A stretch of DNA of 64,000 bases from Ophelia neglecta (Eukaryota), in assembly GCA_965285935.1 (NCBI GenBank), contig OZ260662.1, positions 58,900,001-58,964,000 on the forward strand, written 5' to 3'. The position numbers and the translations under genes are program-made. Positions 2,307-58,670 of this stretch are shown piece after piece. The notes beneath the pieces were generated by a model. It did not search any database. It was given only the letters and a program-made list of their open reading frames with translations, and was not told the origin of the DNA. Within the stretch, counting starts at the first letter, position 1, and each line of letters begins with the position of its first letter.

Positions 2307-2403
2307 ATAAAGCAATTCTATTTACACCTGTTTCGGATCTTCATCCTTACCATGCACCATTTTTAGTACAGGTGTGCACAGCAGACATCTACTTCTACTT
2401 TTA

Positions 2404-13697: not shown

Positions 13698-13937
13698 TTT
13701 GCAATGTGGTCGAGAGATTAATCAATGATCCGAATAAGGTAAAAAATTCAACGAAAATTGCGAGATATTTTGCTGAACCTGGTCATAGCGCTGATGACAT
13801 GCGAGTGGGGGCTATTTGTACCATCGATGACAGGAAGGATGGCTTCAGTATTAAAATATAAATCCTGAGGTTTCCCTGTGTCGCTTCACCAAGGAGCAAG
13901 AAGTTATCGGACTCTTGGGAGCTTATCGTGGAGAGGC

Positions 13938-14403: not shown

Positions 14404-14476
14404 AATTCTATCTCACCTCCCCAGTCTACGTCACTCTAGTAATCACACGAAGATCACAGCAGCTGAGCATCATCAT
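14404..14476 (+). repeat. DIRS left terminus / left ITR
   Basis: 14404-14448 is complementary to ICR 58341-58385; 14440-14476 is complementary to 58555-58591. Confidence 0.9.
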
Positions 14477-15354
14477 TACACAGTTAGCTCTTGAGCAGTG
14501 CACATGTGTGGACCAGTGCTCCGTTAGTGAAATCTCAACTACGTGGCCCAAGGAGGACTTTTCACTGTAGGATAACTTTCTTGTGTTTGTATCACCTGTT
14601 TTGTGTTGAATTCTGTTCCTCCCCTACTTTGCAATGGCTACTATTACTGAGCCTGTATTGCTCAACCCAAATGAGATTGAGCAGCATCCCAATGAAATGA
14701 TGGGCATGCTGGCCAACCTGACTGGCTCCCTTGACAAGATGACCGGCTTTATGGAAAAGCTGGGCAAGGCCTATGAGTCCCTTGCAGCCCCCAAAAAATA
14801 GAGCCAGAACAGAGTTGGCGTTAGGTAACAATAGCGATCAACATTTGGATGATGCTATACTTAAGGACGAGGAAGACTTAAACAGTCTACTCTCCCATGA
14901 TAACCCCTCTGAACCTCAACCTGTTCTTATGGATTGTGAGGAAAAAGAAAATGAGGGCGATGATGGGGATATAGATGTCTTAAATGACATTTGTGATGAA
15001 TTAGAAATGTCTGAAAAAATTTTCATCAAACGTCTCAGAAAAACTTGCTAAAATCGTAAATGCAAGATTTGACAGGAAATTGTCATTTGATCTCCTCAAG
15101 GAGAAGCTTGATAAACACCACCGGCCTAAAAATGGTGAGAAAATGTTAGTGCCTACATTAAATGAAGAGGTAAAGTCATCGATTAATCTGTTGCAGAACA
15201 AAAGAGATCAAAGGCTGGCCCATCTGCAAAAGGCTGTAGTAAACTCAGCTCTAGCGGTCACCACTATGACACAGATGGCCCTCTCTGGCAAAAAAGAATC
15301 CCAGTCCGTTGATTGGGAGAAACTTGTCATTGCTGGCACAGATGCTATAGCTAT

Positions 15355-17482
15355 GAAGAGAGATATATGTAGGTTCTCTGTGCACACCCTAATTATGCAA
15401 TAAAATGAAGTAAAAAGATGTCCAACGGGTGTTAAAACTTTAATAGACCGACGTTTCGGCTGATGCAGCCTTCCTCAAGGTACAAAAAATCTAAATGAGC
15501 AAATTCAAAAAAAATGTTATAGGAAATGACGTCAAAAACCAAATTACGTCGTTAATGACGTCAAACATAGAAACTCGCGACAAAATGCGGTAAATGACAA
15601 ATGAAAGGGAAAATAGTAGAAGGAACATAACAAAAAGTACCAGATTAATAATGCAGAGAACCAAAAACGTCAGGAAAGTGAGTACAGTTGTCCAAAATGA
15701 ACGAAAAGGCACTAATTAACACTCATAAAATTAAAGTCAATATTCATGCCTCCGAGTCCCTGTAAGCATCCCAGTTTGCCGATTATTTTTTGTTCCAGGA
15801 GTTTTCTTCTGTTAATGTCCACCACACTGAGTAGGCCACAAACTTTCATGTCTTCTACGTTGTGTCCATTGGAAGAGAAGTGTTCTCCAACAGCCTTTGA
15901 TTGATCTTTTTTTATGACTGACAGTCTGTGTTCCACGAAACGATCTCCCAATCTTCGTCCAGTTTCACCAACATAGATGTGTTCGCACTTATGACACTCA
16001 ATGACATAGATAAGTGCTCTTGATATACAGGTAAATTTGTCCTTGATGTTAAAAAGTCCTTTTGGTCCCTGTATACTTTTTGCTGGTTAACATAAGAGCA
16101 AGTATAGCAACGGGGTCTACCACAGGAAAAAGTGCCGGCTTCTGGATGGGACGGCTTGGTGTTGGCATGGACTAACATATCTCTTAGGTTACTACCCCTT
16201 TTGTAGGCGACCAAGGGGCGTGATTGGAATACGTTGTGGAGTTCTTCGTCCTCTGAAAGAATAGAAAAGTTCCTCTGTATTATCTTCGCGACCTTCTTAT
16301 TGATCTCGTTGTGGATTATAGGGAATGTTAATGGTAGCTTGTTCTTATCATTTGGTGTTTGTAGTATTTCTTCCCTTGAGAATTTTTCGGCTCTCCTCAA
16401 TCCTTTCATGATGATCTTCCTGGGGTATCCCCGCTGTTGAAAAAAGTCTATCATGTTCCTTGCTTCTCCTTGGAACTGTTCTTCTCTAGAGCATATCTTC
16501 CTCAGGCGCAGAAATTGAGAATATGGAATGCTGTTTTTGCATGCCACTGGATGGTCAGATTCATATAGTAGGTATGAATGAGTATCCGAGTCTTTATAGA
16601 AAATTCCCGAGTGTATTTGATCTTTTTCAATTGATAAAATAGTGTCCAGCATATTAACAGTCTTGTCCGATATCACTGCTACGTATTCTATGTGGGGGTT
16701 ATGCATGTTGACGTAAGATACATATTTCTCTAGGTCTTCTCGGCTCATTGACGTCGCTCCGAAAATGTCGTCTATGTAGCGCTTCTGGAGCTCTGGTTTA
16801 GGACCTTGATACGAAAGGTTAATTTTTTCTTCCTCGTGACCGATAAACAAACAGGCGTACTCTGACCCGAAGCAAGTTCCCATCATGGTTCCTCCAATTT
16901 GAGTGTAGAAGTCTCCTTCAAACTGGAAACAGTTGACCGTAAGGACCAGTTCTGCGAGACGTAGAATAGTAGCTGTGCTTATATTTCTCTGAGATGTGGG
17001 ATCCCTTTGGTCGAGGAAGTGTTTGAGAGCTAAAAGTCCATCACTATTGGGTATGTTAGTGTAGAGGCTCTTGATATCCATAGTGAAAAGCAAGTTGTTA
17101 TTGTCTGTTGGGAAGCGAAACGGCTTGGTGATATTCAAGAGATGGTTGGTGTCTTTGATGAAAGAAGGCAATTCTTGAACAATTGGTTTCAAGAGTTCAC
17201 TCAAATATTTAGAAATCAAATATGTAGGACACGAAATACTGGTACTTTTTGTTATGTTCCTTCTACTATTTTCTCTTTCATTTGTCATTTACCGCATTTT
17301 GTCGCGAGTTTCTATGTTTGACGTCATTAACGACGTAATTTGGTTTTTGACGTCATTTCCTATAACATTTTTTTTGAATTTGCTCATTTAGATTTTTTGT
17401 ACCTTGAGGAAGGCTGCATCAGCCGAAACGTCGGTCTATTAAAGTTTTAACACCCGTTGGACATCTTTTTACTTCATTTTAT
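15355..17482 (-). mobile_element. Penelope family B, 5'-truncated, with inverted upstream pLTR
   Basis: Tail+pLTR+3'UTR at 15355-15711, ORF to ~17238, inverted pLTR ~17238-17482; TSD TGCTATAGCTATG at 15343-15355 and 17483-17495. Confidence 0.93.
15712..17238 (-). pseudogene. Penelope-like RT + GIY-YIG polyprotein (Neptune-like), one frameshift near 16080
   Basis: MDIKSLYTNIP, QIGGTMMG, RYIDDIF, YKDSDTHSYL, CGRPRCYTC, then IYVIECHKC..IYVGET in the other frame. Confidence 0.92.
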
Positions 17483-18000
17483 TGCTATAGCTATGTTGGG
17501 GCATGTAACTAATGAGCTATGCCCACATAGAAAATACCAGCTAAAGCCTGCCCTTAGCCCCGAATACCAGCACCTCTGTAATCAGAGTACAGAAGTAACT
17601 TCACTCTTGTTTGGTGACAACCTGAACAAAGCCATGGCTGATGCAAAACAGGTGGCCAAGCTGGGAAAAAAGGCAACAGGCCAAGGACAGCAGTCAAAAA
17701 ACTGGCAGGGCAAGAACCGGCAGAAATGGAACCCAAATTTCAACAGGCACAAAAACAAAAACAGGTCCAACCAATACAGAGGACACAAACCCAACAATGC
17801 CAGCTCAAGCGGCCAGTACAAACAGAAGGGCCAATAGTCGAGGTAAGGACTAATCATGCTTGTAATTGGACCTACTGGTGTTTTATGGCATCAGTTGATC
17901 TGAAAGATGCATACTATTCTGTCCCTATTGCAGAAGAACATCAAAAGTATCTCAAATTTGAGTGGGAAGGACAATTCTTCCAATACACCGTTTTTCCAAA

Positions 18001-21000
18001 TAGTCTGGGCAGATTCTGGGAAAATGTGTATATTTAAAGTGGTGGAGGCATTTCATGTTTACGGCTGGCAAACATCATTTTTAGATGTATTTTTACATTC
18101 TTAATCGATCTAGAGGGTTTGCCAGAGTCAATTTTCAGCCGTTAACTCACAAACGTGATAAATCCAAAATGGCCGCCACCGAAATATGAAAACCTTATTT
18201 TTGTCATATCTTTGGAACAAAAAATGGTATAAACATAAATAAAGCATCATATTGTATGTTTTCAGGTACAAGGAATCCATTGAGACCATTATTAACGCTT
18301 TAATATTTCAAGAAATCAAGATATATACCATATTTGGGCAAAACATATCACCGACTGTGTCGAAAATGGTCATGTCTTTTATTCATATTGTTGATATCAG
18401 ACATGGTAAGAACATAAATGAAACATATTTTTTGTATGTTTTCAGGCACTAGATAGAAATCCATTAAGACTGCCATTTAGCAAGTAAATTTATATTGCCC
18501 ACCATTGGACTTTTTTTACTATTATACCTGTTCAAATAAGCATTGATTGGTTGTGGGCATATGACCAACTCACCAGAAATGTTAATTACGATCAACCCAA
18601 ATGGTTGTACTGATTGACCTTGTGCTTGTTCCTTTTTTGTTGTTGTATGCAGTTGTTTTTTGTAATTTGTTTTATATGTAACACATTTCATTTTAACAAC
18701 TTTGAAACAAATGTTCCCGTTTCTCAAGGAAGATGGAGATGTCATTTATTACATTGGGAATGATTTGTATTGGACACATATTTGTCATTGTGTAATTTTA
18801 GTAACAAAATAAATGTTGTTCCATTTAATGTTCCGGGAATATGTCATGTAAATGTGACTACAACTGAACCTCATGTGCGCCTGTACCATAAAGGCATCTG
18901 TCTTTGTTTGAGCATTTAATTTGTACCAATGGATTCAGATCAAGCATCAAGGAAGCGGGGATTGCTAATAGATTATGGCTAGCCTAAACATTCTTTTATA
19001 GAGCGCGGTTTAGTCGGCTTAAATTGTCATTACACTGTGACAGCTCCATGCTCTCAAGACGGATTCACAATAGGCCTACCAAAGAATGTACAGGTCTGTT
19101 TTCCGACTAAAGAGGTCACCGTAGTATGAACACCAACTGGGCAACAGCGGTTTGGGCGGAAGTCAGGGAATATCAAAATCGGAAGCTCCTGTCTCAACAA
19201 GTTGTTTGTGTGAGCTTTGCTTATTTGAGCAGATGTGTACACCGGAAGTAGTACATATATAGGTCAGAGGGGATACTCTAGTACTTGGAAGTTTGTAGAT
19301 AGTCAGGTAGGAACTTAAGCTCAGTAGTATACATTATATATTAAATACTAGACTGGTTATAAAAGCAATATTACAACATGCCGGGCAACATGCCTTTCTT
19401 AAAGATAGCTTCAGAGCATACAATATTAAAAGATTTTACAATGTTCATTTCGCATTTCAGCTGGTACACTCTCATTTTTATCATTATACATAAGGGGGAG
19501 AGGCCTCGGTAGTGCCAGACTGAATGGCTTCTGAAATATTGCTTCAAGAGGCTTGTGATCTGTGTGTATTGTTACTGAGCGGCCAAATACATATATATGC
19601 ATAGTTTCTCATAAGCATGGAGTAAAGCAAGTAGTTCTCTCTCAATATTGGTCCCTTTTCTTTGGAGGTCAACGACTTACGTTAAAACTGGACCGTTTTC
19701 CTCTTTGAAGCAACACAGTGCCGAGTCCCTTGAGCGAAGCATCTGTTTCTATAGTAACTTGCAGGCCAGGGTCGAAGTGCACTAGTTTAGTGATCTCTGT
19801 TTTCACTTTCTGAGTCTTCTCGATCCCTGCTGCATCTCAGCTGTCCGTACATAGTGGACATCTTTCTTCAACAATCCCCTCGTGCTGAATGTCATCTGAG
19901 CCAGTTTGGGCATGAAGTTGGCCATGAAGTTGACCGAGCCAAGGAAACTCTATAGCTCCTGCTTGTTCTCTGGCGGCGACATTTCTTGGATGTCCTGGAC
20001 TTTGTCCAGGGCTGGTTTCACGCCATCAGTTGATATCATTCGGCCGAAGTAATCAATGCTGGTTTTCTCGATGCAGAATTTATTTGGGTTGAACCTGATA
20101 CCTGCGTTCTTGGTTCTACGTACAGTCTCAAATAGGTGGATTTCCTGCCTTTCTTCCGTAGAACCCTGTACCTTCACGTCATCGGCACAGCTTGTCCAAT
20201 TCCAGTTTGAATTTGTTCTGTGTATCAAGTGGAATAGCGCGGGGTGGAAGCTGCACTGGCTCGATATCAGGATTCACTTTAAGATGTGCTTCGCCCTCAA
20301 AAAGTCCCACAGAACCATCAAACATCTCTGGGAAAATGTTCATCAAGTCCTTCTGCGGGTCTCCTGTTATCTTGCCTAGTGGCAGGTATTCCTTCCCCTT
20401 ATGCTTAAGCGTGCTGTAATCTACCTCTGTCTCCTCTGTGGCATGCACAGCTTCTACTTCAGCATTGATGTTCCTCAATGTACATATTTCTGCAAAGGTG
20501 ATGAGTTTGAAATGGGTACAAAAATCTACACCAAGAATCAGTTCAGTGCCGAGTTCTGTGATTATAATGCTGATGTTGTGTGTGTGATCATAACACTTGA
20601 CCCTGGTAGTCAGTACCCCTTTAGCTAGTAAGTCTGTACCAGTAACACCTCGTAACTTCACCTGTGTCGGTTTCAAACAGTGTTCTCCAAGGTGGAAATC
20701 TTTTAGCATATGAAGTGGCATACAAGTGGCTCCTGTATCCAACTTTCCTGCGACATCACCTCTCGGGGTTGTCTCCACGATACCAATGTTAATTGTATTA
20801 TAAAAGTCATCGTCATCACTTTCACTACACAATGTGACAGCTCTAGTCTTCTGAGTTCTGTGGGTCCTTTTTCGAAGACAAGCTTTCTCGAAGTGCCCTT
20901 TTCGGAAACAGAAGTCGCATTCAGCTACATGGGCTGGGCTGTTCTCGCGAATGTGTTGTGATGCAGAGCAACATTTACATCTCCTGTCCCCCCTGCTATC

Positions 21001-22175
21001 TGTTCCTCTGTGATCGTGAAAGGATTCCGCTGGTGGTGTGTATAGAGTGTGCCTTTTCTGTCGGTTACCTCTTTGTTGTGGACGACGTGGCGGTTCGTGA
21101 GAGTATGAAGCGCTAACCTGTATTTCACTGATTTTTTTCATTGTGACATCAAGGGACTCAAACTGTCTGAGGAGACCCAGACATGTCTTGACTTATACAT
21201 CTTTGTTCTTCACCATAAGCTTTTTCTTGGCTTCAGTGTTGATACATCCATTTATCAGTTTGTCTGCAATCAAAAAGATAGATTCGGCTGGGAACGCAGC
21301 TGGTCTATGTAGCTCAACAAGGCGGCTATAGCAACTGTTAGTATTCTACTTTCTATTTAACATTGTAGAAATCTTCACGCGCTTGGTGATGAATGTCGGA
21401 ACATTTTGCCTGAATAAAGTCACTTAATGGTCCTTTATAGACAATAGTAATGGAAAACTGGTAGCTTTTTTGGTAGCTGCATTCCTGTTTAACATTTGTT
21501 TATAGTGGTCAATGAAAAATATACGTACATTTATGTAAATAGTATAGCCGCATCAGTTCTAGTAGTCTATACTCAGTATATCCCTCATTGGAATCATAAC
21601 ATAAAGATAAAATTAAGTTCCTTTTTCAAGTTAGTATATTAGATGCAACCACTAATAAAAATTTGCCCAAATATGGTGTATATCTTGATTTCTTGAAATA
21701 TTGAGGCCTTAATAATGGTCTCATTGGATTCCTTGTACCTGAAAACATACAAAATGATGCTTTATTTATGTTTATAACATTTTTTGTGCCGAAGATATGA
21801 CAAAAATTAGGTTTTCATATTTTGGTGGCGGCCATTTTGGATTTGCCCTAATATGACATCAATCTTGATTTCTCGGACTATTGAAGATTTATTAAAGGTC
21901 TCAATAGATTCCTTTTCACCTGAAAACATACAAAATGATGCTTTTTTTATGTTTCTATCATTTTTGGTGCCAAAGATATGACAAAAATTAGGTTTTCATA
22001 TTACAGTGGCGGCCATTTTGGATTTACCATGTTTGTGAGTTAACGGCTGAAAATTGAGTCCGGCATACCCCCTAGATCGATTAAGAATGCAAAAATACAT
22101 CTAAAAATGATGTTTGCCAGCCGTAAACATGAAATGCCTCCACCATTAACATTTTCTGAATACTGGCCTAGTCTA
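18001..22175. mobile_element. Non-autonomous TIR DNA transposon, Academ-like (TAG...CTA termini, 3-bp TSD AAA), inserted in the DIRS RT
   Basis: Long imperfect TIRs (18001-~18342 vs ~21662-22175, with ~180-bp subrepeats carrying CAAAATGGCCGCC). Removing it restores TTTCCAAACGGCC as in the other RT copies. Superfamily inferred from termini and TSD only. Confidence 0.7.
19500..21330 (-). mobile_element. Decayed Gypsy (Mag-like) LTR retrotransposon gag-pol remnant
   Basis: Tandem Zn knuckles (CKCC...H; CDFCFRKGHFEKAC), protease LDTGAT, RT ADDVKVQG...IDYFG, RNaseH ETDASLKGLG and TDHKPL; internal deletions; no LTR pair recognised. Confidence 0.8.
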
Positions 22176-22178
22176 AAA

Positions 22179-24345
22179 CGGCCTAAGAAGCTGTCCTCGA
22201 GATTTTACCAAGTTGCTTAAGCCAGCTTATGCCGAATTACGCCGGCAAGCGAATCAATCTGTGGCATATATGGAAGACTCATTTTTACAAGGTGAGCAAA
22301 AGGCTGACTGCCAGTTAAACGTGCTTCACACAGCTGAGATGATCTCATCCCTCGGTTTTATTATACACCCTGAAAAATCAGTACTTGTCCCAACTCAGAT
22401 AATTGAGTTCCTGGGCTTCCTGTTGGACTCAATCAACATGGTAGTAAAACTGACCCCACACAAAGCTACTGTTGTAAAACAGGCATGTGAACATCTCATG
22501 TCAAAGAATCTTCCCACAATTAGGGAAGTTTGTGTGGTTATAGGCAAATTAGTGGCTAGCTTTCCTGGAGTACTAATGGGACCACTTCACTATAGAACAA
22601 TAGAGACTGACAAAACTGCAGCTTTGAAGCTAAACAAGGGGAACTTTGATGCCACCATGACTTTATCACAAGGGGCCATTTCTGATTTGCAGTGGTGGAC
22701 TCAGCATGTTGAAACTGCTTTCAAACCAATTTCTCATGGTGAACCAGATGTTGTTCTCACCACAGATGCAAGCCTTAAAGCCTAGGGTGCCTTTAATAAA
22801 ACCAACTCACATTCAGCCCAAGGGGAATGGTCAATTAATGAAGCATCGAGTCAAATCAATGTTCTAGAACTAAAAGCAGCTCTTTTCGAACTGAAATCTC
22901 TCAGTGCTGTCTTGACAAATAAGCACATCAGACTTATGGTTGATAACATGACTGCTGTGGCTTACATTAGAGAGATGGGTGGGTGCAAATCCCATGATTG
23001 TGATCTTATCAGCCTAGAAATCTGGCAGTGGGCTTCTAGAAGCCTGTTTCCAGAAGCCTGTGGATCAGTGTAGCCCGTATTGCTGGAAAAGACAACATTG
23101 AAGCTGATATATTATCCAGAAAGTTTGATCATGAAACAGAATGGATGTTAAACCCACAAATGTTTAGAAATGCAATCAATTTGTGCCAGTTATAACCTAA
23201 GATTGATCTCTTTGCCTTCTAGAATCAACTGTCAATTGCCTACTTTCTTAGCTTGGAAACCTCAGCCAAATGCTTTTGCAATTGATGCTTTCTCAATTAA
23301 TTGGTCATTACTTGATTTTTACGCTTTTCCGCCTTTCTCTGTCATTTCTTTGGTTATACTAAAAGTCTTACATGAGAAAGCAACAGGAATCATTGTTATT
23401 CCCTACTGGCCGACTCAGTAAAATGAAGTAAAAAGATGTCCAACGGGTGTTAAAACTTTAATAGACCGACGTTTCGGCTGATGCAGCCTTCCTCAAGGTA
23501 CAAAAAATCTAAAATGACTCAGGCCTGGTTCCCATCTGTCATACATCTGTTGTGTGATTTCCCAATTTTGCTTTCTAGGAGCCGGTCATTATTGACCCTG
23601 CCGAGCAATCCACACAAAACACATCTATTGCACAAGAAGCTAGATCTACTGATGTGCTACATATCGAGGCAAACATCCAAAGTCAGGGACTTTCAACAAC
23701 GGCTAGAAATCTCATTCAGGCATCATGGAGACCGTCCACGAAAAAACAATACATCCCCTACTTACGGCGGTGGGAAATTTATTGCCATCAGAGGAAAATC
23801 AATAAAATTAAAAGTTCTGTGACTGATGGAATTAATTAACTTGGCTGAACTTTATAATACCGGAATTGGATAAAGTGCTATCAGCACCGCTCGTTCGGCA
23901 CTATCAACAGTTCTGCCGACTGTGGACCGAATAAATTTTGGCAAAGACCCCAATGTGACAAGGCTTTTAAAAGGAGTCTTCAATAAAAGACCTTCTTTGC
24001 CAAGGTTTCCAGCAATTTTTGATGTCAACATCTTATGATTCATTTTAAAAATATACCACTTTACCTGATCCCACTCAAGGAACTTTCTACAAAATTAGTA
24101 ATGCCGCTCGCTCTATTAACTGGGCGTGTGCAGACTCTCGTGGCTATCAAAACGGACAAGCTAACTTGTAAACCTACAAAGTGTGTTATCACAATTGATT
24201 CCGTATTAAAAACATCGAAGCCAGGGCGGCACATCAAGCCTATTGAGCTTTTGGCCTTTGAGGATGAAACATTGTCCCCTGTAAAGCATTTACAGAAATA
24301 TCTTGATTCAACATCTTCACTAAGGGGGAATGAGACCAAACTATT
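22179..24345 (+). pseudogene. DIRS unit 0: RT 3' part (YMED), RNaseH, MT and truncated YR
   Basis: Continues from 17878-18000 across the TIR element; stop at 22785. Confidence 0.9.
23419..23515 (-). mobile_element. 97-bp hammerhead-only family B insertion in the DIRS MT domain; copies at 26157-26253, 40531-40627 and 43269-43365
   Basis: 7-bp TSD GACTCAG; empty site present in the other nine units. Confidence 0.92.
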
Positions 24346-24488
24346 GGTGATGAGGCTATTTTCAAGTTGAATGTTGATCAAATATTGCTGAATGCAATTA
24401 ACAGTGTAAAGAAGTTTAAGGCTGGCCGGCTTAAGCACTTTGTAAACAAGTGGTAATCTCTAACAACTGATAAAGAGATCATTCAAAT

Positions 24489-28553: not shown

Positions 28554-28682
28554 CCCGTATTGCTGGAAAAGACAACATTGAAGCTGATATATTATACAGA
28601 AAGTTTGATCATGAAACAGAATGGATGTTAAACCCACAAATGTTTAGAAATGCAATCAATTTGTGCCAGTTAGAACCTAAGA

Positions 28683-29060: not shown

Positions 29061-29155
29061 AGGGACTTTCAACAACGGCTAGAAATCTCATTCAGGCATC
29101 ATGGAGACCGTCCACGAAAAAACAATACATCCCCTACTTACGGCGGTGGGAAATT

Positions 29156-48571: not shown

Positions 48572-50155
48572 CCCGTATTGCTGGAAAAGACAACATTGAA
48601 GCTGATATATTATCCAGAAAGTTTGATCATGAAACATAATGGATGTTAAACCCACAAATGTTTAGAAATGCAATCAATTTGTGCCAGTTAGAACCTAAGA
48701 TTGATCTCTTTGCCTTCTAGAATCAACTGTCAATTGCCTACTTTCTTAGCTTGGAAACCTCAGCCAAATGCTTCTGCAATTGATGCTTTCTCAATTAATT
48801 GGTCATTACTTGATTTTTACGCTTTTCCGCCTTTCTCTGTCATTTCTTTGGTTATACTAAAAGTCTTACATGAGAAAGCAACAGGAATCATTGTTATTCC
48901 CTACTGGCCGACTCAGGCCTGGTTCCCATCTGTCATACATGTGTTGTGTGATTTCCCAATTTTGCTTTCTAGGAGCCGGTCATTATTGACCCTGCCGAGC
49001 AATCCACACAAAACACATCTATTGCACAAGAAGCTAGATCTACTGATGTGCTACATATCGAGGCAAACATCCAAAGTCAGGGACTTTCAACAACGGCTAG
49101 AAATCTCATTCAGGCATCATGGAGACCGTCCACGAAAAAACAATACATCCCCTACTTACGGCGGTGGGAAATTTATTGCCATCAGAGGAAAATCAATAAA
49201 ATTAAAAGTTCTGTGACTGATGGAATTAATTAACTTGGCTGAACTTTATAATACCGGAATTGGATAAAGTGCTATCAGCACCGCTCGTTCGGCACTATCA
49301 ACAGTTCTGCCGACTGTGGACCGAATAAATTTTGGCAAAGACCCCAATGTGACAAGGCTTTTAAAAGGAGTCTCAATAAAAGACCTTCTTTGCCAAGGTT
49401 TTCAGCAATTTTTCATGTCAACATCTTATGATTCATTTTAAAAATATATTGCCATCAGAGGAAAATCAATAAAATTAAAAGTTCTGTGACTGATGGAATT
49501 AATTAACTTGGCTGAACTTTATAATACCGGAATTGGATAAAGTGCTATCAGCACCGCTCGTTCGGCACTATCAACAGTTCTGCCGACTGTGGACCGAATA
49601 AATTTTGGCAAAGACCCCAATGTGACAAGGCTTTTAAAAGGAGTCTTCAATAAAAGACCTTCTTTGCCAAGGTTTTCAGCAATTTTTGATGTCAACATCT
49701 TATGATTCATTTTAAAAATATACCACTTTACCTGATCCCACTCAAGGAACTTTCTACAAAATTAGTAATGCCGCTCGCTCTATTAACTGGGCGTGTGCAG
49801 ACTCTCGTGGCTATCAAAACGGACAAGCTAACTTGTAAACCTACAAAGTGTGTTATCACAATTGATTCCGTATTAAAAACATCGAAGCCAGGGCGGCACA
49901 TCAAGCCTATTGAGCTTTTGGCCTTTGAGGATGAAACATTGTCCCCTGTAAAGCATTTACAGAAATATCTTGATTCAACATCTTCACTAAGGGGGAATGA
50001 GACCAAACTATTGGTGATGAGGCTATTTTCAAGTTGAATGTTGATCAAATATTGCTGAATGCAATTAACAGTGTAAAGAAGTTTAAGGCTGGCCGGCTTA
50101 AGCACTTTGTAAACAAGTGGTAATCTCTGACAACTGATAAAGAGATCATTCAAAT

Positions 50156-51479
50156 ATGGTCAAAGGCTACCATATTCCCTTTAATGCTTCCCCAATACAA
50201 TTAAACCTGCCTACGAAAACGGTTTTTTGTGCACGGGAAATGACTTTGATTACAAATGAAGTACAGTCACCTTTAGAAAAAGGGGTTATAGAGAAATGTA
50301 GCAGAGAACCTTGGGATTTTGTCTCTAACATTTTTACTAGGGAGAAAAAAGATGGTTCGAGTAGGATTATCTTGAATGTTAAAAAACTGAACATGTATGT
50401 GGATCATACCCATTTCAAAATGAAGACGCTATTGACAGCAATAAGGTTAATGAAATCAGGATGTTTTATGGCATCAATTGATCTGAAAGATGCATACTAT
50501 TCTGTCCCTATTGCAGAAGAACATCAAAAGTATCTCAAATTTGAGTGGGAAGGACAATTCTTCCAATACACCGTTTTTCCAAACGGCCTAAGAAGCTGTC
50601 CTCGAGATTTTACCAAGTTGCTTCAGCCAGCTTATGCCGAATTACGCCGGCAAGCTAATCAATCTGTGGCATATATGGATGACTCATTTTTACAAGGTGA
50701 GCAAAAGGCTGACTGCCAGTTAAACGTGCTTCACACAGCTGAGATGATCTCATCCCTCGGTTTTATTATACACCCTGAAAAATCAGTACTTGTCCCAACT
50801 CAGATAATTGAGTTCCTGGGCTTCCTGTTGGACTCAATCAACATGGTAGTAAAACTGACCCCACACAAAGCTACTGTTGTAAAACAGGCATGTGAACATC
50901 TCATGTCAAAGAATCTTCCCACAATTAGGGAAGTTTGTGTGGTTATAGGCAAATTAGTGGCTAGCTTTCCTGGAGTACTAATGGGACCACTTCACTATAG
51001 AACAATAGAGACTGACAAAACTGCACCTTTGAAGCTAAACAAGGGGAACTTTGATGCCACCATGACTTTATCACAAGGGGCCATTTCTGATTTGCAGTGG
51101 TGGACTCAGCATGTTGAAACTGCTTTCAAACCAATTTCTCATGGTGAACCAGATGTTGTTCTCACCACAGATGCAAGCCTTAAAGCCTGGGAGTGCCTTT
51201 AATAAAACCAACTCAAATTCAGCCCAAGGGGAATGGTCAATTAATGAAGCATCGAGTCATATCAATGTTCTAGAACTAAAAGCAGCTCTTTTCGAACTGA
51301 AATGTCTCAGTGCTGTCTTGACAAATAAGCACATCAGACTTATGGTTGATAACATGACTGCTGTGGCTTACATTAGAGAGATGGGTGGGTGCAAATCCCA
51401 TGATTGTGATCTTATCAGCCTAGAAATCTGGCAGTGGGCTTCTAGAATCCTGTTTCTAGAAGCCTGTGGATCAGTGTAG
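50156..51479 (+). pseudogene. DIRS RT-RNaseH, unit 10 (frameshift near 51192)
   Basis: Split ORFs 50156-51202 and 51111-51479. Confidence 0.8.
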
Positions 51480-52793
51480 CCCGTATTGCTGGAAAATACA
51501 ACATTGAAGCTGATATATTATCCAGAAAGTTTGATCATGAAACAGAATGGATGTTAAACCCACAAATGTTTAGAAATGCAATCAATTTGTGCCAGTTAGA
51601 ACCTAAGATTGATCTCTTTGCCTTCTAGAATCAACTGTCAATTGCCTACTTTCTTAGCTTGGAAACCTCAGCCAAATGCTTCTGCAATTGATGCTTTCTC
51701 AATTAATTGGTCATTACTTGATTTTTACGCTTTTCCGCCTTTCTCTGTCATTTCTTTGGTTATACTAAAAGTCTTACATGAGAAAGCAACAGGAATCATT
51801 GTTATTCCCTACTGGCCGACTCAGGCCTGGTTCCCATCTGTCATACATCTGTTGTGTGATTTCCCAATTTTGCTTTCTAGGAGCCGGTCATTATTGACCC
51901 TGCCGAGCAATCCACACAAAACACATCTATTGCACAAGAAGCTAGATCTACTGATGTGCTACATATCGAGGCAAACATCCAAAGTCAGGGACTTTCAACA
52001 ACGGCTAGAAATCTCATTCAGGCATCATGGAGACCGTCCACGAAAAAACAATACATCCCCTACTTACGGCGGTGGGAAATTTATTGCCATCAGAGGAAAA
52101 TCAATAAAATTAAAAGTTCTGTGACTGATGGAATTAATTAACTTGGCTGAACTTTATAATACCGGAATTGGATAAAGTGCTATCAGCACCGCTCGTTCGG
52201 CACTATCAACAGTTCTGCCGACTGTGGACCGAATAACTTTTGGCAAAGACCCCAATGTGACAAGGCTTTTAAAAGGAGTCTTCAATAAAAGACCTTCTTT
52301 GCCAAGGTTTTCAGCAATTTTTGATGTCAACATCTTATGATTCATTTTAAAAATATACCACTTTACCTGATCCCACTCAAGGAACTTTCTACAAAATTAG
52401 TGATGCTGCTCGCTCTATTAACTGGCCAGCGTGTGCAGACTCTCGTGGCTATCAAAACGGACAAGCTAACTTGTAAATCTACAAAGTGTGTTATCACAAT
52501 TGATTCCGTATTAAAAACATCGAAGCCAGGGCGGCACATCAAGCCTATTGAGCTTTTGGCCTTTGAGGATGAAACATTGTCCCCTGTAAAGCATTTACAG
52601 AAATATCTTGATTCAACATCTTCACTAAGGGGGAATGAGACCAAACTATTGGTGATGAGGCTATTTTCAAGTTGAATGTTGATCAAATATTGCTGAATGC
52701 AATTAACAGTGTAAAGAAGTTTAAGGCTGGCCGGCTTAAGCACTTTGTAAACAAGTGGTAATCTCTAACAACTGATAAAGAGATCATTCAAAT

Positions 52794-54116
52794 ATGGTCA
52801 AAGGCTACCATATTCCCTTTAATGCTTCCCCAATACAATTAAACCTGCCTAAGAAAAAGGTTTTTTGTGCACGGGAAATGACTTTGATTACAAATGAAGT
52901 ACAGTCACCTTTAGAAAAAGGGGTTATAGAGAAATGTAGCAGAGAACCTTGGGATTTTGTCTCTAACATTTCTACTAGGGAGAAAAAAGATGGTTCGAGT
53001 AGGATTATCTTGAATGTTAAAAAACTGAACATGTATGTGGATCATACCCATTTCAAAATGAAGACGCTATTGACAGCAATAAGGTTAATGAAATCAGGAT
53101 GTTTTATGGCATCAATTGATCTGAAAGATGCATACTATTCTGTCCCTATTGCAGAAGAACATCAAAAGTATCTCAAATTTGAGTGGGAAGGACAATTCTT
53201 CCAATACACCGTTTTTCCAAACGGCCTAAGAAGCTGTCCTCGAGATTTTACCAAGTTGCTTAAGCCAGCTTATGCCGAATTACGCCGGCTAGCGAATCAA
53301 TCTGTGGCATATATGGATGACTCATTTTTACAAGGTGAGCAAAAGGCTGACTGCCAGTTAAACGTGCTTCACACAGCTGAAATGATCTCATCCCTCGGTT
53401 TTATTATACACCCTGAAAAATCAGTACTTGTCCCAACTCAGATAATTGAGTTCCTGGGCTTCCTGTTGGACTCAATCAACATGGTAGTAAAACTGACCCC
53501 ACACAAAGCTACTGTTGTAAAACAGGCATGTGAACATCTCATGTCAAAGAATCTTCCCACAATTAGGGAAGTTTGTGTGGTTATAGGCAAATTAGTGGCT
53601 AGCTTTCCTGGAGTACTAATGGGACCACTTCACTATAGAACAATAGAGACTGACAAAACTGCACCTTTGAAGCTAAACAAGGGGAACTTTGATGCCACCA
53701 TGACTTTATCACAAGGGGCCATTTCTGATTTGCAGTGGTGGACTCAGCATGTTGAAACTGCTTTCAAACCAATTTCTCATGGTGAACCAGATGTTGTTCT
53801 CACCACAGATGCAAGCCTTAAAGCCTGGGGTGCCTTTAATAAAACCAACTCACATTCAGCCCAAGGGGAATGGTCAATTAATGAAGCATCGAGTCATATC
53901 AATGTTCTAGAACTAAAAGCAGCTCTTTTCGAACTGAAATCTCTCAGTGCTGTCTTGACAAATAAGCACATCAGACTTATGGTTGATAACATGACTGCTG
54001 TGGCTTACATTAGAGAGATGGGTGGGTGCAAATCCCATGATTGTGATCTTATCAGCCTAGAAATCTGGCAGTGGGCTTCTAGAAGCCTGTTTCTAGAAGC
54101 CTGTGGATCAGTGTAG
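52794..54116 (+). CDS. DIRS RT-RNaseH ORF, unit 11
   Basis: Same motifs as unit 1. Confidence 0.8.
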   Translation: MVKGYHIPFNASPIQLNLPKKKVFCAREMTLITNEVQSPLEKGVIEKCSREPWDFVSNISTREKKDGSSRIILNVKKLNMYVDHTHFKMKTLLTAIRLMKSGCFMASIDLKDAYYSVPIAEEHQKYLKFEWEGQFFQYTVFPNGLRSCPRDFTKLLKPAYAELRRLANQSVAYMDDSFLQGEQKADCQLNVLHTAEMISSLGFIIHPEKSVLVPTQIIEFLGFLLDSINMVVKLTPHKATVVKQACEHLMSKNLPTIREVCVVIGKLVASFPGVLMGPLHYRTIETDKTAPLKLNKGNFDATMTLSQGAISDLQWWTQHVETAFKPISHGEPDVVLTTDASLKAWGAFNKTNSHSAQGEWSINEASSHINVLELKAALFELKSLSAVLTNKHIRLMVDNMTAVAYIREMGGCKSHDCDLISLEIWQWASRSLFLEACGSV

Positions 54117-55415
54117 CCTGTATTGCTGGAAAAGACAACATTGAAGCTGATATATTATCCAGAAAGTTTGATCATGAAACAGAATGGATGTTAAACCCAC
54201 AAATGTTTAGAAATGCAATCAATTTGTGCCAGTTAGAACCTAAGATTGTTCTCTTTGCCTTCTAGAATCAACTGTCAATTGCCTACTTTCTTAGCTTGGA
54301 AACCTCAGCCAAATGCTTTTGCAATTGATGCTTTCTCAATTAATTGGTCATTACTTGATTTTTACGCTTTTCCGCCTTTCTCTGTCATTTCTTTGGTTAT
54401 ACTAAAAGTCTTACATGAGAAAGCAACAGGAATCATTGTTATTCCCTACTGGCCGACTCAGGCCTGGTTCCCATCTGTCATACATCTGTTGTGTGATTTC
54501 CCAATTTTGCTTTCTAGGAGCCGGTCATTATTGACCCTGCCGAGCAATCCACACAAAACACATCTATTGCACAAGAAGCTAGATCTACTGATGTGCTACA
54601 TATCGAGGCAAACATCCAAAGTCAGGGACTTTCAACAACGGCTAGAAATCTCATTCAGGCATCATGGAGACCGTCCACGAAAAAACAATACATCCCCTAC
54701 TTACGGCGGTGGGAAATTTATTGCCATCAGAGGAAAATCAATAAAATTAAAAGTTCTGTGACTGATGGAATTAATTAACTTGGCTGAACTTTATAATACC
54801 GGAATTGGATAAAGTGCTATCAGCACCGCTCGTTCGGCACTATCAACAGTTCTGCCGACTGTGGACCGAATAACTTTTGGCAAAGACCCCAATGTGACAA
54901 GGCTTTTAAAAGGAGTCTTCAATAAAAGACCTTCTTTGCCAAGGTTTTCAGCAATTTTTGATGTCAACATCTTATGATTCATTTTAAAAATATACCACTT
55001 TACCTGATCCCACTCAAGGAACTTTCTACAAAATTAGTGATGCTGCTCGCTCTATTAACTGGCCAGCGTGTGCAGACTCTCGTGGCTATCAAAACGGACA
55101 AGCTAACTTGTAAACCTACAAAGTGTGTTATCACAATTGATTCCGTATTAAAAACATCGAAGCCAGGGCGGCACATCAAGCCTATTGAGCTTTTGGCCTT
55201 TGAGGATGAAACATTGTCCCCTGTAAAGCATTTACAGAAACATCTTCACTAATGGGGAATGAGACCAAACTATTGGTGATGAGGCTATTTTCAAGTTGAA
55301 TGTTGATCAAATATTGCTGAATGCAATTGACAGTGTAAAGAAGTTTAAGGCTGGCCGGCTTAAGCACTTTGTAAACAAGTGGTAATCTCTAACAACTGAT
55401 AAAGAGATCATTCAA

Positions 55416-56714
55416 ATGGTCAAAGGCTACCATATTCCCTTTAATGCTTCCCCAATACAATTAAACCTGCCTAAGAAAACGGTTTTTTGTGCACGGGAAA
55501 TGACTTTGATTACAAATGAAGTACAGTCACTTTAGAAAAAGGGGTTATAGAGAAATGTAGAAGAGAACCTTGGGATTTTGTCTCTAACATTTTTACTAGG
55601 GAGAAAAAAGATGTTTCGAGTAGGATTATCTTGAATGTTAAAAAACTGAACATGTATGTGGATCATACCCATTTCAAAATGAAGACGCTATTGACAGCAA
55701 TAAGGTTAATGCAATCAGGATGTTTTATGGCATCAATTGATCTGAAAGATGCATACTATTCTGTCCCTATTGCAGAAGAACATCAAAAGTATCTCAAATT
55801 TGAGTGGGAAGGACAATTCTTCCAATACACCGTTTTTCCAAACGGCCTAAGAAGCTGTCCTCGAGATTTTACCAAGTTGCTTAAAGCCAGCTTATGCCGA
55901 ATTACGCCGGCAAGCGAATCAATCTGTGGCATATATGGATGACTCATTTTTACAAGGTGAGCAAAAGGCTGACTGCCAGTTAAACGTGCTTCACACAGCT
56001 GAGATGATCTCATCCCTCGGTTTTATTATACACCCTGAAAAATCAGTACTTGTCCCAACTCAGATAATTGAGTTCCTGGGCTTCCTGTTGGACTCAATCA
56101 ACATGGTTGTAAAACTGACCCCACACAAAGCTACTGTTGTAAAACAGGCATGTGAACATCTCATGTCAAAGAATCTTCCCACAATTAGGGAAGTTTGTGT
56201 GGTTATAGGCAAATTAGTGGCTAGCTTTCCTGGAGTACTAATGGGACCACTTCACTATAGAACAATAGAGACTGACAAAACTGCAGCTTTGAAGCTAAAC
56301 AAGGGGAACTTTGATGCTACCATGACTTTATCACAAGGGGCCATTTCTGATTTGCAGTGGTGGACTCAGCATGTTGAAACTGCTTTCAAACCAATTTCTC
56401 ATGGTGAACCAGATGTTGTTCTCACCACAGATGCAAGCCTTAAAGCCTGGGGTGCCTTTAATAAAACCAACTCACATTCAGCCCAAGGGGAATGGTCAAT
56501 TAATGAAGCATCGAGTCATATCAATGTTCTAGAACTAAAAGCAGCTCTTTTCGAACTGAAATCTCTCAGTGCTGTCATGACAAATAAGCACATCAGACTT
56601 ATGGTTGATAACATTACTGCTGTGGCTTACATTAGAGAGATGGGTGGGTGCAAATCCCATGATTGTGATCTTATCAGCCTAGAAATTCTTTTAGAAGCCT
56701 GTGGATCAGTGTAG
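55416..56714 (+). pseudogene. DIRS RT-RNaseH, unit 12 (most diverged, several frameshifts)
   Basis: Split ORFs 55631-55942 and 55926-56714. Confidence 0.8.
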
Positions 56715-57184
56715 CCCGTATTGCTGGAAAAGACAACATTGAAGCTGATATATTATCCAGAAAGTTTGATCATGAAACAGAATGGATGTTAAACCCACAA
56801 ATGTTTAGAAATGCAATCAATTTGTGCCAGTTAGAACCTAAGATTGATCTCTTTGCCTTCTAGAATCAACTGTCAATTGCCTACTTTCTTAGCTTGGAAA
56901 CCTCAGCCAAATGCTTTTGCAATTGATGCTTTCTCTATTAATTGGTCATTACTTGATTTTTACGCTTTTCCGCCTTTCTCTGTCATTTCTTTGGTTATAC
57001 TAAAAGTCTTACATGAGAAAGCAACAGGAATCATTGTTATTCCCTACTGGCCGACTCAGGCCTGGTTCCCATCTGTCATACATCTGTTGTGTGATTTCCC
57101 AATTTTGCTTTCTAGGAGCCGGTCATTATTGACCCTGCCGAGCAATCCACACAAAACACATCTATTGCACAAGAAGCTAGATCT

Positions 57185-58128
57185 CACGAGGCAAACATCC
57201 AAAGTCAGGGACTTTCAACAACGGCTAGAATTCTTATTCAGGCATCATGGAGACCGTCCACGAAAAAAACAATACATCCCCTACTTACGGCGGTGGGAAA
57301 TTTATAGCCATCAGAGGAAAATCAATAAAATTAAAAGTTCTGTGACTGATGGAATTAATTAACTTGGCTGAACTTTATAATACCGCTCGTTCGGCACTAT
57401 CAACAGTTCTGCCGACTGTGGACCGAATAACTTTTGGCAAAGACCCCAATGTGACAAGGCTTTTAAAAGGAGTCTTCAATAAAAGACCTTCTTTGCCAAG
57501 GTTTTCAACAATTTTTGATGTCAACATCTTATGATTCATTCTAAAAATATACCACTTTGCCTGATCCCACTCAAGGAACTTTCTACAAAATTAGTGATGC
57601 TGCTCGCTCTATTAACTGGCCAGCGTGTGCAGACTCTCGTGGCTATCAAAACGGACAAGCTAACTTGTAAACCTACAAAGTGTGTTATCACAATTGATTC
57701 CGTATTAAAAACATCGAAGCCAGGGCGGCACATCAAGCCTATTGAGCTTTTGGCCTTTGAGGATGAAACATTGTCCCCTGTAAAGCATTTACAGAAATAT
57801 CTTGATTCAACATCTTCACTAAGGGGGAATGAGACCCAACTATTTATAAGTCACTGTAAGCCACATTTGCCAGTTAAAATTGACACTATCCGCAGATGGA
57901 TTGTTTCTATCATGGCTGAAGCCGGAATAGACACTAATGTGTATTCAGCCCATAGCAGCCGAGCTGCTAGCACGTCTAAAGCAGCAAAACATGGGGTTGC
58001 CAGTTGACTCAATCCTGTCCTGTGTAGGCTGGAGTAAAGCAACAACTTTTGCAAAGTTTTATCATAAAGACATAACTGTCAGTCCTGAAAATACACTAAG
58101 CTCCCATATTTTAAATGGGTGTTATTGA
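57185..58128 (+). pseudogene. DIRS tyrosine recombinase; the only copy with the catalytic C-terminus (frameshifted)
   Basis: LALLTGQRVQ (R), KTSKPG (K), AHSSRAAS (HxxR), GWSKATTFAKFYHK (W, Y). Confidence 0.9.
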
Positions 58129-58340
58129 ATGTCGATTGCTTTTTGGATATCATTTTTTCCTTCATATAAGAGGTGTATTACACTTAGTTTACATGATAAA
58201 CAGATTGCTTATTGATAGTTGATATATACAAGCTCTTTACCCTTATTTAAGTTTGTGTTGTTGTTCTTATCAAATAACGTTAAATTTTTGGCATTGAATG
58301 CTCTGGTACACCTCATGCTAACCTTAGCTTTCAAATCTTT

Positions 58341-58470
58341 GTGTAATTACTAGAGTGACGTATACTGGGGAGGTGGGATAGAATTACAAAATTAAACGAG
58401 ACTTACCTGTAAGTCGAAGTTTGATTGGGATTCTATCGAATCTCCTCAGTCAGGAACGAGTAATCACACG
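58341..58470 (+). repeat. DIRS internal complementary region (ICR)
   Basis: 5' half is complementary to the left end and 3' half to the right extension 58582-58670; the halves overlap at AATT 58382-58385. Confidence 0.92.
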
Positions 58471-58554
58471 CCCTCCCTGTGAGTTCCCCTACCCAGGTAG
58501 ATTACTTGTTCCTGACCATAAAATTTTAAGGTTAACATTCGGTCCTTTTCAATC

Positions 58555-58670
58555 ATGATGATGCTCAACTGCTGTGATCTTCGTGTGATTATTCGTTCCT
58601 GACTGAGGAGATTCGTTAGAATCCCAATCAAACTTCGACTTACAGGTAAGTCTCGTATAATTTTGTAATT
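58555..58670 (+). repeat. DIRS right ITR and right extension
   Basis: ATGATGATGCTCAACTGCTGTGATCTTCGTGTGATTA is the reverse complement of 14440-14476 with 1 mismatch. Confidence 0.92.

What the first reader, a model, noticed from the sequence alone, without database searches (positions are those of the whole stretch)
14404..58670. A single DIRS1 element whose coding interior has become a 33-kb macrosatellite while its termini stayed single-copy
Seen: one left end, one gag, one ICR/right end, but 13 RT copies (unit 0 plus 12 head-to-tail repeats). Each repeat runs from just 5' of the RT (FKAGRLKHFVNKW) through RNaseH and MT to mid-YR, and only the last copy keeps the YR HxxR...Y terminus. The junction is identical in every unit and resembles a short microhomology (YR CAACTATT vs the ORF2 5' sequence ACCTACTGGTG still visible at ~17871-17881). 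Inference: one microhomology-mediated duplication seeded an expansion by unequal exchange or rolling-circle replication, i.e. a satellite being born inside a YR retrotransposon. Eight of the 12 units keep a single open 396-440 aa RT(YMDD)-RNaseH frame, but nearly all share disablements (14-bp duplication before the last RNaseH Asp, stops in YR), so function is not shown.
Basis: partly seen in the sequence, partly recalled or inferred. Interest (0 to 1): 0.8.

Follow-up and report, generated by a model that had tools for sequence, protein, structure and literature searches.

The report
Tandem array born inside one DIRS retrotransposon
One dead copy of a tyrosine-recombinase (DIRS-type) retrotransposon has had its reverse-transcriptase-to-half-recombinase interior repeated head to tail 12 extra times; it is a clean example of the already known way that transposons turn into satellite DNA, and nothing shows the array has a function.

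Summary
Window 14404-58670 is one DIRS1-type insertion. An empty-site paralogue at 62723-63367 joins both flanks across a single AATT. It has one left end and gag, one YR C-terminus/ICR/right end, 12 copies of reference segment L007 3914-4361 and 13 of 4362-6537.

All 12 junctions share an exact 18-mer that is contiguous nowhere else in the 762-Mb assembly. About 9 dispersed copies of the family keep its two halves 2.54 kb apart. So the unit is not a mobile element.

Units differ by 0.03-1.4%, and the edge units are the most divergent. A single 97-bp insertion with a 7-bp TSD sits in U00, U01, U06 and U07. A nested 274-bp repeat has 1-3 copies. U02 groups with U08/U09. Together these show growth by unit and multi-unit DNA duplication.

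Array-specific changes are neutral (N:S 46:14 and 21:5, against 3.65:1 sites) and include fixed stops. About 1.6% of the 2.0-2.25% locus-specific divergence is shared by all units. A dead copy was therefore amplified late, or the units were homogenised.

New here: unit 0 lacks 443 bp, and that breakpoint lies 2-4 bp from the junction breakpoint. This suggests one two-jump template-switch seed.

Reads could not be consulted, so assembly inflation is untested. This is a new member of a known kind, of modest interest.

The parts
14404..15355 (+). DIRS left terminus (begins AATT; the first 51 nt are complementary to the ICR) and the first part of gag. Single copy.
   Evidence: Matches L007 2506-3534 at 94-96% and occurs once in the window. 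The terminus/ICR complementarity is seen in the reference copy.
15356..17482 (-). Later insertion of a Penelope-like element (RT ORF 15912-17288, GIY-YIG tail 15712-15951), flanked by a 12-bp target duplication (15344-15355 and 17483-17494).
   Evidence: The ORFs are. A near-identical plus-strand paralogue at 12845-13387 gives a GIY-YIG Pfam hit just under Pfam's cut-off (22.1 against 22.6 bits), and the inverted match 13070-13703 / 16029-15396 links the two.
17483..17881 (+). Second part of gag, running on into the natural sequence just upstream of ORF2. It ends at the unit-0 deletion joint (GGTG|TTTT).
   Evidence: Matches L007 3522-3918 at 97.7%. The joint sequence is, and the joint is unique in the genome.
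17882..18000 (+). Unit 0, first piece (RT motif region). Unit 0 lacks L007 3919-4361 (443 bp).
18001..22175 (.). Foreign 4175-bp insertion that splits unit 0. It has long imperfect terminal inverted repeats (18040-18342 against 21662-22145, with 181-bp sub-repeats). Inside is a minus-strand ORF pair that reads like an LTR-retroelement gag-protease-RT fragment (19950-21141); that family call is by eye only.
   Evidence: The inverted repeats are and the ORFs. Pfam found no family in the 320-aa ORF.
22176..24345 (+). Unit 0, second piece (RT C-terminal part, RNase H, MT, and the YR N-terminal half up to the junction). It carries the 97-bp insert at 23419-23515.
24346..55274 (+). Units U01-U11, complete head-to-tail units corresponding to L007 3914-6537.
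- Starts: 24346, 27088, 30270, 33179, 36087, 38720, 41458, 44199, 47106, 50013, 52651.
- Lengths: 2742, 3182, 2909, 2908, 2633, 2738, 2741, 2907, 2907, 2638, 2624.
- 97-bp insert: U01, U06, U07.
- 274-bp sub-repeat: x3 in U02; x2 in U03, U04, U08, U09.
55275..57844 (+). Unit U12, the last and most divergent unit (1.0-1.4% from the others, with private deletions of 24, 16 and 27 alignment columns). It runs without a junction into the rest of the element.
57845..58670 (+). Single-copy right part: the YR C-terminal half (HSSR and the FYH tyrosine, frameshifted between them), the ICR (about 58335-58470) and the right terminus (58582-58670, ending AATT).
62723..63367 (+). Paralogous empty target site. 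Homologues of the left flank (86%) and the right flank (93%) are contiguous across a single AATT at about 62928-62931.

Best explanation
One DIRS1-type YR retrotransposon, about 4.86 kb, integrated at an AATT in a repeated target. It decayed there as a dead copy. One illegitimate template-switch event then joined mid-YR (L007 6537) back to the spacer between ORF1 and ORF2 (L007 3914).

The tandem duplicate then expanded to 13 RT-bearing units (about 33 kb) by host DNA processes. These are unequal sister-chromatid or homologue exchange and replication slippage, acting on single units and on blocks of several units, with partial homogenisation. The element's termini, gag and ICR lay outside the repeated segment and stayed single copy.

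I also infer that the seed was one event with two jumps: 3918 to 4362, then 6537 back to 3914. That would give a first unit lacking 443 bp, plus the junction, in a single step. Unequal exchange between the two copies of 4362-6537 then produces exactly the structure seen.

Shown here: the anatomy, the single insertion, the uniqueness of the junction, growth by DNA-level block duplication, and neutral evolution. Inferred: the two-jump seed, the late timing, and which host process did the work.
For: Single insertion:
- The empty-site paralogue joins both flanks across one AATT.
- The reference copy has the ITR/ICR geometry of DIRS1.

Copy counts of the reference pieces in the window are 1, 12, 13 and 1.

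The junction is an exact 18-mer, present 12 times. It is contiguous only here in 762 Mb; its halves lie 2.54 kb apart in about 9 dispersed copies.

The array is monophyletic (100/100), with U12 as sister to the rest and U02 grouping with U08/U09 (97/89).

DNA-level growth:
- One 97-bp insertion with the same 7-bp TSD is found in U00, U01, U06 and U07.
- The 274-bp sub-repeat has 1-3 copies, in the pattern ins, ins, x3, x2, x2, x1 | ins, ins, x2, x2, x1.
- Shared SNV blocks support the same groupings.
- The edge units are the most divergent.

Neutrality: within ORF2, polymorphic changes are 46 N: 14 S and fixed changes 21 N: 5 S, against a site ratio of 3.65: 1. There are fixed stops in ORF2 (L007 4023) and ORF3 (L007 6061).

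Timing: locus-derived divergence is 1.76-2.15% in the single-copy parts and 2.0-2.25% per unit, of which 1.6% is shared by all units.

Two-jump seed:
- The deletion joint in U00 (GGTG|TTTT) lies 2-4 bp from the junction breakpoint (ACT|GGTG), and that joint is unique in the genome.
- The sites where U00 and the middle units are derived while U12 is ancestral all lie in the right half of the unit. That is what a B1-left/B0-right recombinant founder would give.
Against: - Copy number and the block duplication therefore rest on the assembly alone.
- The units' common ancestor is not the age of the array. Concerted evolution could mimic late amplification.
- The breakpoint coincidence (roughly p = 0.002-0.01 under uniform breakpoints) could be chance, or a local fragile site hit twice. 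A modest hairpin ends at L007 ~3915 (z -2.5, 4 of 200 shuffles).
- The higher-order pattern in SNVs is only partial. Mean divergence at a 6-unit offset is 0.44%, against about 0.5% overall.
- Only about 4-5 sites bear on the recombinant-founder idea.
Confidence: 0.8

Rival explanations
1. Assembly artefact. The true locus has fewer units. For example, two haplotype versions of a 6-7 unit array were concatenated, or the assembler over-expanded a repeat.
For: The array has two similar blocks, U00-U05 and U06-U10, with 7.5 kb at 99.5% identity at an offset of 17112. No read evidence could be obtained.
Against: Every unit has its own combination of SNVs and indels: 52 of 71 polymorphic derived sites are singletons (the full variant table is). 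The blocks differ in structure (x3 against x2 sub-repeats, 6 units against 5). Collapse is the usual artefact in arrays, not expansion. No second contig in the 223-contig assembly carries the junction. Even under this rival, an array of 6 or more units remains.
Confidence: 0.1
2. The seed was made by the element's own reverse transcriptase. Template switching during cDNA synthesis produced an internally duplicated and deleted copy, which then integrated. Host recombination only expanded it afterwards.
For: Two jumps are anchored within 4 bp of each other, at the 3' foot of a predicted hairpin in the ORF1-ORF2 spacer. From general knowledge, retroviral-type RTs are known to make microhomology-guided deletions and duplications.
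Against: All units share about 1.6% locus-specific, neutral-looking changes, including stops. This points to duplication after a long residence as a dead copy, unless homogenisation erased the history. No other copy in the genome carries either joint.
Confidence: 0.1
3. Extrachromosomal circle route. A 2.6-kb circle of L007 3914-6537, closed at the junction, was amplified by rolling-circle replication, and the concatemer recombined back into the resident copy.
For: It would also give identical junctions. Many variants are singletons, a partly star-like pattern.
Against: It explains neither the truncated unit 0 nor the block-wise sharing of the 97-bp insert and the 274-bp copy number. Those need later DNA-level duplications in any case. 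U12 and U00 are graded in divergence as array edges should be.
Confidence: 0.07
4. The 2.6-kb unit is an independent non-autonomous mobile element that inserted repeatedly. Alternatively, whole DIRS circles integrated in tandem by the tyrosine recombinase.
For: From general knowledge, DIRS elements integrate through circles, and site-specific recombinases can build tandem multimers.
Against: The junction is internal (mid-YR to the ORF1-ORF2 spacer), not right end to left end. The units lack the termini, gag and ICR. The junction occurs nowhere else in the genome. There are no TSDs or AATT joints at the unit borders.
Confidence: 0.02

Closest known systems
CRM1TR / CRM4TR, tandem repeats derived from maize centromeric Ty3/gypsy retrotransposons (Sharma et al. 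2013, PMC3648361)
   Same: The tandem repeat is made entirely of part of one retrotransposon family. It was initiated by illegitimate recombination and then amplified and homogenised locally. Later heterologous TE insertions serve as time markers.
   Different: The maize units come from the LTR and UTR, which are non-coding. Here the unit is the coding interior (RT, RNase H, MT and half of YR) of a DIRS element. The parent element's own ends, and an empty-site paralogue, are still visible around the array.
TE tandem dimers expanding into arrays in Drosophila: hobo x16, and the R1 and Bari1 arrays (McGurk and Barbash 2018, PMC5932611)
   Same: A young array of low copy number (about 13-16 units) made of a transposon, seen as an intermediate between a TE and a satellite. 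It expands by unequal exchange.
   Different: Those dimers arise from double insertion of whole elements, so their junctions are end to end. Here the seed is an internal rearrangement with non-terminal breakpoints, so no transposition step is needed for tandem formation.
D4Z4 macrosatellite with the DUX4 retrogene ORF in each 3.3-kb unit (my own knowledge; DUX4 is described as a retrogene in PMC3836709)
   Same: A kilobase-scale macrosatellite in which each unit carries an ORF of retro-origin, and only the last unit is followed by the complete 3' context.
   Different: D4Z4 is old, conserved and functional. This array evolves neutrally and carries fixed stops, and expression could not be tested.
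Canonical DIRS1-type elements (ITRs plus an ICR; RT, RNase H, MT and YR)
   Same: The parent element and its approximately 9 dispersed relatives have the full DIRS1 architecture.
   Different: This copy is 44 kb long. It holds 13 RT segments and three kinds of foreign insert: a Penelope-like element, a TIR element and four copies of a 97-bp insert. It is not a functional element.

Membership tests
DIRS1-type YR retrotransposon (order DIRS) | Reverse transcriptase with an RNase H and a DIRS-type methyltransferase-like domain in ORF2 | tested here: met
   RVT_1 scores E 1e-17 in the units and 8e-17 in the intact copy. Atlas neighbours at 0.98-0.99 carry RVT_1, RT_RNaseH and Dam. The RNase H and MT assignments rest on those neighbours, not on a direct Pfam hit.
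DIRS1-type YR retrotransposon (order DIRS) | A tyrosine recombinase instead of a DDE integrase or an endonuclease | tested here: met
   Phage_integrase scores E 1.7e-11, with a weak SAM-like N-terminal domain, in ORF3 of L007. HSSR and the FYH tyrosine are present in the last copy in the window.
DIRS1-type YR retrotransposon (order DIRS) | Inverted terminal repeats, plus an internal complementary region that matches the joined right and left ends | tested here: met
   In L007 the left 51 nt and the right 89 nt are 100% complementary to the adjacent internal stretches 7028-7078 and 7075-7163, which overlap by AATT. A further 39-nt terminal inverted repeat is present. The same pieces are present once each in the window.
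DIRS1-type YR retrotransposon (order DIRS) | Integration without a long TSD, at a short core shared with the circle junction | tested here: met
   AATT stands at both ends of the element, and there is a single AATT in the empty-site paralogue.
Macrosatellite / TE-derived satellite | Head-to-tail units of 1 kb or more, with one junction shared by all units | tested here: met
   There are 12 identical junctions and the period is 2.57-3.18 kb.
Macrosatellite / TE-derived satellite | Concerted evolution: units are more alike to each other than to dispersed relatives, the edge units are more divergent, and there is higher-order structure | tested here: met
   Divergence is 0.03-1.4% within the array and 2.6-3.0% to the dispersed copies. 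U12 and U00 are the most divergent. The array is monophyletic. Structural variants are shared in blocks.
Macrosatellite / TE-derived satellite | Copy number that really exists in the DNA and varies among individuals | not testable with these tools
No second assembly of the species was available.
Independent non-autonomous mobile element | Copies with the same borders at unrelated loci | tested here: not met
   The junction is contiguous only in this array. Everywhere else its halves are 2.54 kb apart, inside ordinary copies.

The most novel reading that the evidence does not exclude
The birth event of the array is preserved at base-pair resolution. One replicative accident with two template switches, anchored at the foot of a hairpin in the ORF1-ORF2 spacer, went 3918 to 4362 and then 6537 back to 3914. 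It created the truncated first unit and the junction together. A C-to-A change 7 bp from the breakpoint, present in all 12 junction copies but not in the natural copy in U12, may be a scar of error-prone synthesis. If so, this locus records in full the steps from insertion, through decay and a complex seed, to unequal-exchange expansion for a nascent satellite.
Probability: 0.35. Interest if true: 0.5.

Novelty: new member of a known kind. Interest (0 to 1): 0.4.

Why it matters
Many satellites are known to descend from transposons, but the first steps are rarely seen. At this locus the steps can be read in order:
- the parent element's two ends;
- an empty-site paralogue;
- the seed junction, and a probable second breakpoint from the same event;
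- later inserts that act as markers of which units were copied from which.

The array holds more RT segments (13) than all dispersed copies of the family together (about 9). Copy-number or 'TE activity' estimates based on RT hits would therefore be inflated by a single dead locus.

In my four literature searches I found no paper describing an internal coding array in a DIRS element. The general phenomenon is established, however, and nothing here points to a function.

Tried and rejected
- The look-up of encoding contigs with the junction-spanning 111-aa ORF found nothing on record. The tool says records of the window's own genome may be left out, so this is uninformative.
- Rfam found no family at gathering threshold anywhere in the window, and none at E up to 1 in the 97-bp insert.
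- Folding around the two breakpoints gave only a modest hairpin at the ORF1-ORF2 spacer (z -2.5) and nothing at the YR breakpoint (z -0.3). I treat this as a hint only.
- Literature. Four searches found general precedents for TE-derived tandem repeats but no DIRS interior array. Two candidate papers mention DIRS only in passing, and a third has no DIRS array.
- Selection on the ORFs is rejected, because N:S matches the neutral site ratio.
- An independent mobile unit and YR-mediated tandem integration are rejected on junction position and genome-wide uniqueness.
All comparisons used the natural copies.
- The organism was not identified.
Full report
**What is there**

A self-comparison of the window shows a head-to-tail array from 22176 to 57844. 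The period is 2.57-3.18 kb and unit identity is 96-99.97%.

The units carry ORFs of 396-440 aa with a YMDD reverse transcriptase in nine of 12 units. Pfam RVT_1 scores E 1e-17.

**The parent family**

The junction probe led to dispersed copies elsewhere in the assembly. The assembly (G000) is 762 Mb, and the window is C2:58900001-58964000. I fetched six of these copies.

The copy in L007 (2506-7363, 4858 bp) looks intact:
- ORF1 is 293 aa.
- ORF2 is 691 aa, with RVT_1. Its atlas neighbours carry RVT_1, RT_RNaseH and Dam.
- ORF3 is 325 aa, with Phage_integrase.

Its left 51 nt and right 89 nt are perfectly complementary to two adjacent internal stretches that overlap by AATT, and there is a further terminal inverted repeat. 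This is the ITR-plus-ICR architecture of DIRS1. The family assignment is sound.

**Anatomy of the window copy**

I blasted the reference pieces against the window.

| Reference piece (L007) | Matches in window | Window coordinates |
|---|---|---|
| Left end and gag | 1 | 14404-15355 and 17483-17875 |
| 3914-4361 ('A') | 12 | one per unit, U01-U12 |
| 4362-6537 ('B') | 13 | one per unit, U00-U12 |
| 6538-7363 (YR C-terminus, ICR, right end) | 1 | 57845-58670 |

The break in YR falls at about residue 231 of 325, inside the catalytic domain. HSSR and the FYH tyrosine lie only beyond 57844. Even there they are separated by a frameshift.

The gag is split by a 2127-bp minus-strand Penelope-like element with a 12-bp target duplication. 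Unit 0 is split by a 4175-bp element with long terminal inverted repeats.

**It is one insertion**

The left flank (to 14403) and the right flank (from 58671) have homologues that lie side by side at 62723-63367 in the same window. They are joined across a single AATT. The filled site has AATT at both ends of the element. The 44-kb stretch is therefore bounded by the two ends of one integration event.

**The junction is unique**

A 181-bp probe across the junction is contiguous only in the 12 array copies. Everywhere else its two halves lie 2.54 kb apart, in normal order, inside about 9 dispersed copies:
- chromosome-scale contig C1, two copies;
- C2, at 46.7 Mb;
- C5, three copies;
- C7;
- C9, two copies.

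The unit is therefore not a mobile element in its own right. The array holds more RT segments than the rest of the family put together.

**How the array grew**

The units differ in structure.

| Variant | Units |
|---|---|
| 97-bp insert with the same 7-bp TSD | U00, U01, U06, U07 |
| 274-bp sub-repeat (L007 5969-6243), x3 | U02 |
| 274-bp sub-repeat, x2 | U03, U04, U08, U09 |
| 274-bp sub-repeat, x1 | all other units, and all dispersed copies |

The 97-bp insert is a single insertion event, so its presence in two separated pairs of units requires copying of DNA blocks after the array already existed.

Shared SNVs tell the same story: U02 with U08 and U09, U05 with U06 and U07, and U01 with U07. 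In an ML tree:
- the array is monophyletic (100/100);
- U12 is sister to all the others (95/90);
- U02/U08/U09 form a clade (97/89);
- U05/U06 form a clade with weaker support (92/91).

Divergence among units is 0.03-1.4%. The edge units U12 and U00 are the most divergent. Divergence to the dispersed copies is 2.6-3.0%.

This is the signature of unequal exchange and slippage with partial homogenisation. It is not the signature of a single burst.

**No sign of function**

I polarised changes with three dispersed copies and classified them in the frame of the intact ORF2.
- Array-polymorphic derived changes are 46 non-synonymous or stop against 14 synonymous.
- Array-fixed changes are 21 against 5.
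- The ratio of non-synonymous to synonymous sites is 3.65 to 1.

So dN/dS is about 0.9 for the polymorphic changes and about 1.15 for the fixed ones.

There are fixed stops at ORF2 codon 30 and in ORF3. A net +11-bp duplication frameshifts ORF2 in U00-U11. The long open RT-RNase H frames simply reflect the array's youth.

**Timing**

I used five dispersed copies plus a more distant one to define the ancestral state.

| Part of the window element | Derived substitutions |
|---|---|
| Left end and gag (single copy) | 1.76% |
| Right part (single copy) | 2.15% |
| Each unit, total | 2.0-2.25% |
| Shared by all units | 1.6% |

About three quarters of the locus's decay thus predates the common ancestor of the units. 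The simplest reading is that a long-dead copy was amplified late. Concerted evolution could give the same picture, so this remains an inference.

**The seed**

The junction joins the YR sequence ending AACTATT to the spacer sequence beginning GGTGATGAGG. In the natural spacer, GGTG is preceded by CCTACT, so the microhomology is only 4 of 5 bases.

Unit 0 keeps the natural gag-to-spacer continuity up to GGTG. It then jumps to L007 4362, which deletes 443 bp at a TG microhomology. This joint is unique in the genome.

The deletion's left breakpoint and the junction's landing point are 2-4 bp apart. Under uniform breakpoints that is a coincidence of roughly 0.2-1%.

One event with two template switches explains both: copy to 3918, skip to 4362, copy to 6537, then return to 3914. 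That gives gag-B-J-A-B-right end. Unequal exchange between the two B copies then yields exactly the observed series: a truncated first unit followed by complete A+B units.

Two further observations are consistent with this:
- The few sites where U00 and the middle units are derived but U12 is ancestral all lie in the right half of B. These are the +11-bp duplication and L007 positions 5341, 5344, 6200 and 6530.
- A modest hairpin ends at L007 ~3915.

Whether the switching polymerase was the host's or the element's RT cannot be decided. The shared neutral decay favours a host, post-integration event.

**What could not be done**

Long-read tiling and depth are the decisive checks against an assembly artefact, and they are missing.

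Internal evidence argues against an artefact, but it does not replace reads:
- every unit has its own combination of variants;
- no second contig carries the junction.

**Comparison with what is known**

Retrotransposon-derived tandem repeats are established:
- CRM1TR and CRM4TR in maize, initiated by illegitimate recombination (PMC3648361);
- TE dimers that expand into arrays in Drosophila (PMC5932611).

In my literature searches I found no description of a DIRS coding interior turned into an array inside its own intact termini.

The window also holds a second array, of a 2078-bp Penelope-related unit. Earlier notes list many satellites in this genome. Tandem amplification therefore seems common here.

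**Verdict**

The feature is real, well resolved and instructive, but it is a new member of a known kind. Interest is 0.4.

Noticed in passing
window 2169-12411 (related copies at 12555-13068 and 59678-60895): A second macrosatellite: 4.9 head-to-tail copies of a 2078-bp unit at about 99% identity. It is followed by a 180-aa ORF with a weak GIY-YIG hit (12845-13387). The array region sampled (1-6400) has no ORF of 110 aa or more on the repeat's own strand. It looks like a decayed Penelope-like array.
   Followed up: partly
window 23419-23515, 26157-26253, 40531-40627, 43269-43365: A 97-bp insert with a 7-bp TSD (GACTCAG) in four units. It is 96-97% identical to sequences at the ends of the Penelope-like copies in the window (for example 14103-14173 and about 17414-17489). 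It is probably an extremely truncated Penelope-like insertion. Rfam finds no hammerhead in it, even at E up to 1.
   Followed up: partly
window 15356-17482 (minus strand): A Penelope-like element inserted into the DIRS gag with a 12-bp target duplication (GCTATAGCTATG). It has an open 458-aa RT ORF, and its GIY-YIG part is in a separate frame. It is 98.7% identical over 635 bp to the plus-strand copy at 13070-13703.
   Followed up: partly
window 18001-22175: A 4.2-kb element with imperfect terminal inverted repeats of 230-480 bp, built partly of 181-bp sub-repeats. It encloses a minus-strand ORF pair that reads like an LTR-retroelement gag-protease-RT fragment; Pfam found no family in the 320-aa ORF. 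It is a foldback or TIR-type insertion into unit 0, possibly with a 3-bp TSD (AAA).
   Followed up: partly
window 62723-63367 against 14171-14403 and 58671-59105: The DIRS target is itself a repeated sequence, and an unoccupied paralogue lies 4 kb downstream. AATT is the shared core at the empty site, at both element ends and at the overlap in the ICR.
   Followed up: yes
L008 and L009 (C9:59.80 and 59.82 Mb); C5:38.44-38.46 Mb: Two full DIRS copies lie 16.4 kb apart on C9. They differ by only 0.19% in the unit-equivalent segment (L007 3914-6537), and both have 80-82% matches to window 14169-14411 about 1.1 kb upstream; they are probably a segmental duplication. Three copies cluster within 20 kb on C5, in mixed orientation. 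L007 has all three ORFs open; L009 has ORF2 and ORF3 open but ORF1 split into 229 and 114 aa.
   Followed up: no
L007 3862-3915 (equivalent to window ~17825-17878 and to the start of each unit): A predicted hairpin whose 3' foot coincides with both rearrangement breakpoints (DNA fold z -2.5; 4 of 200 shuffles fold as well).
   Followed up: partly
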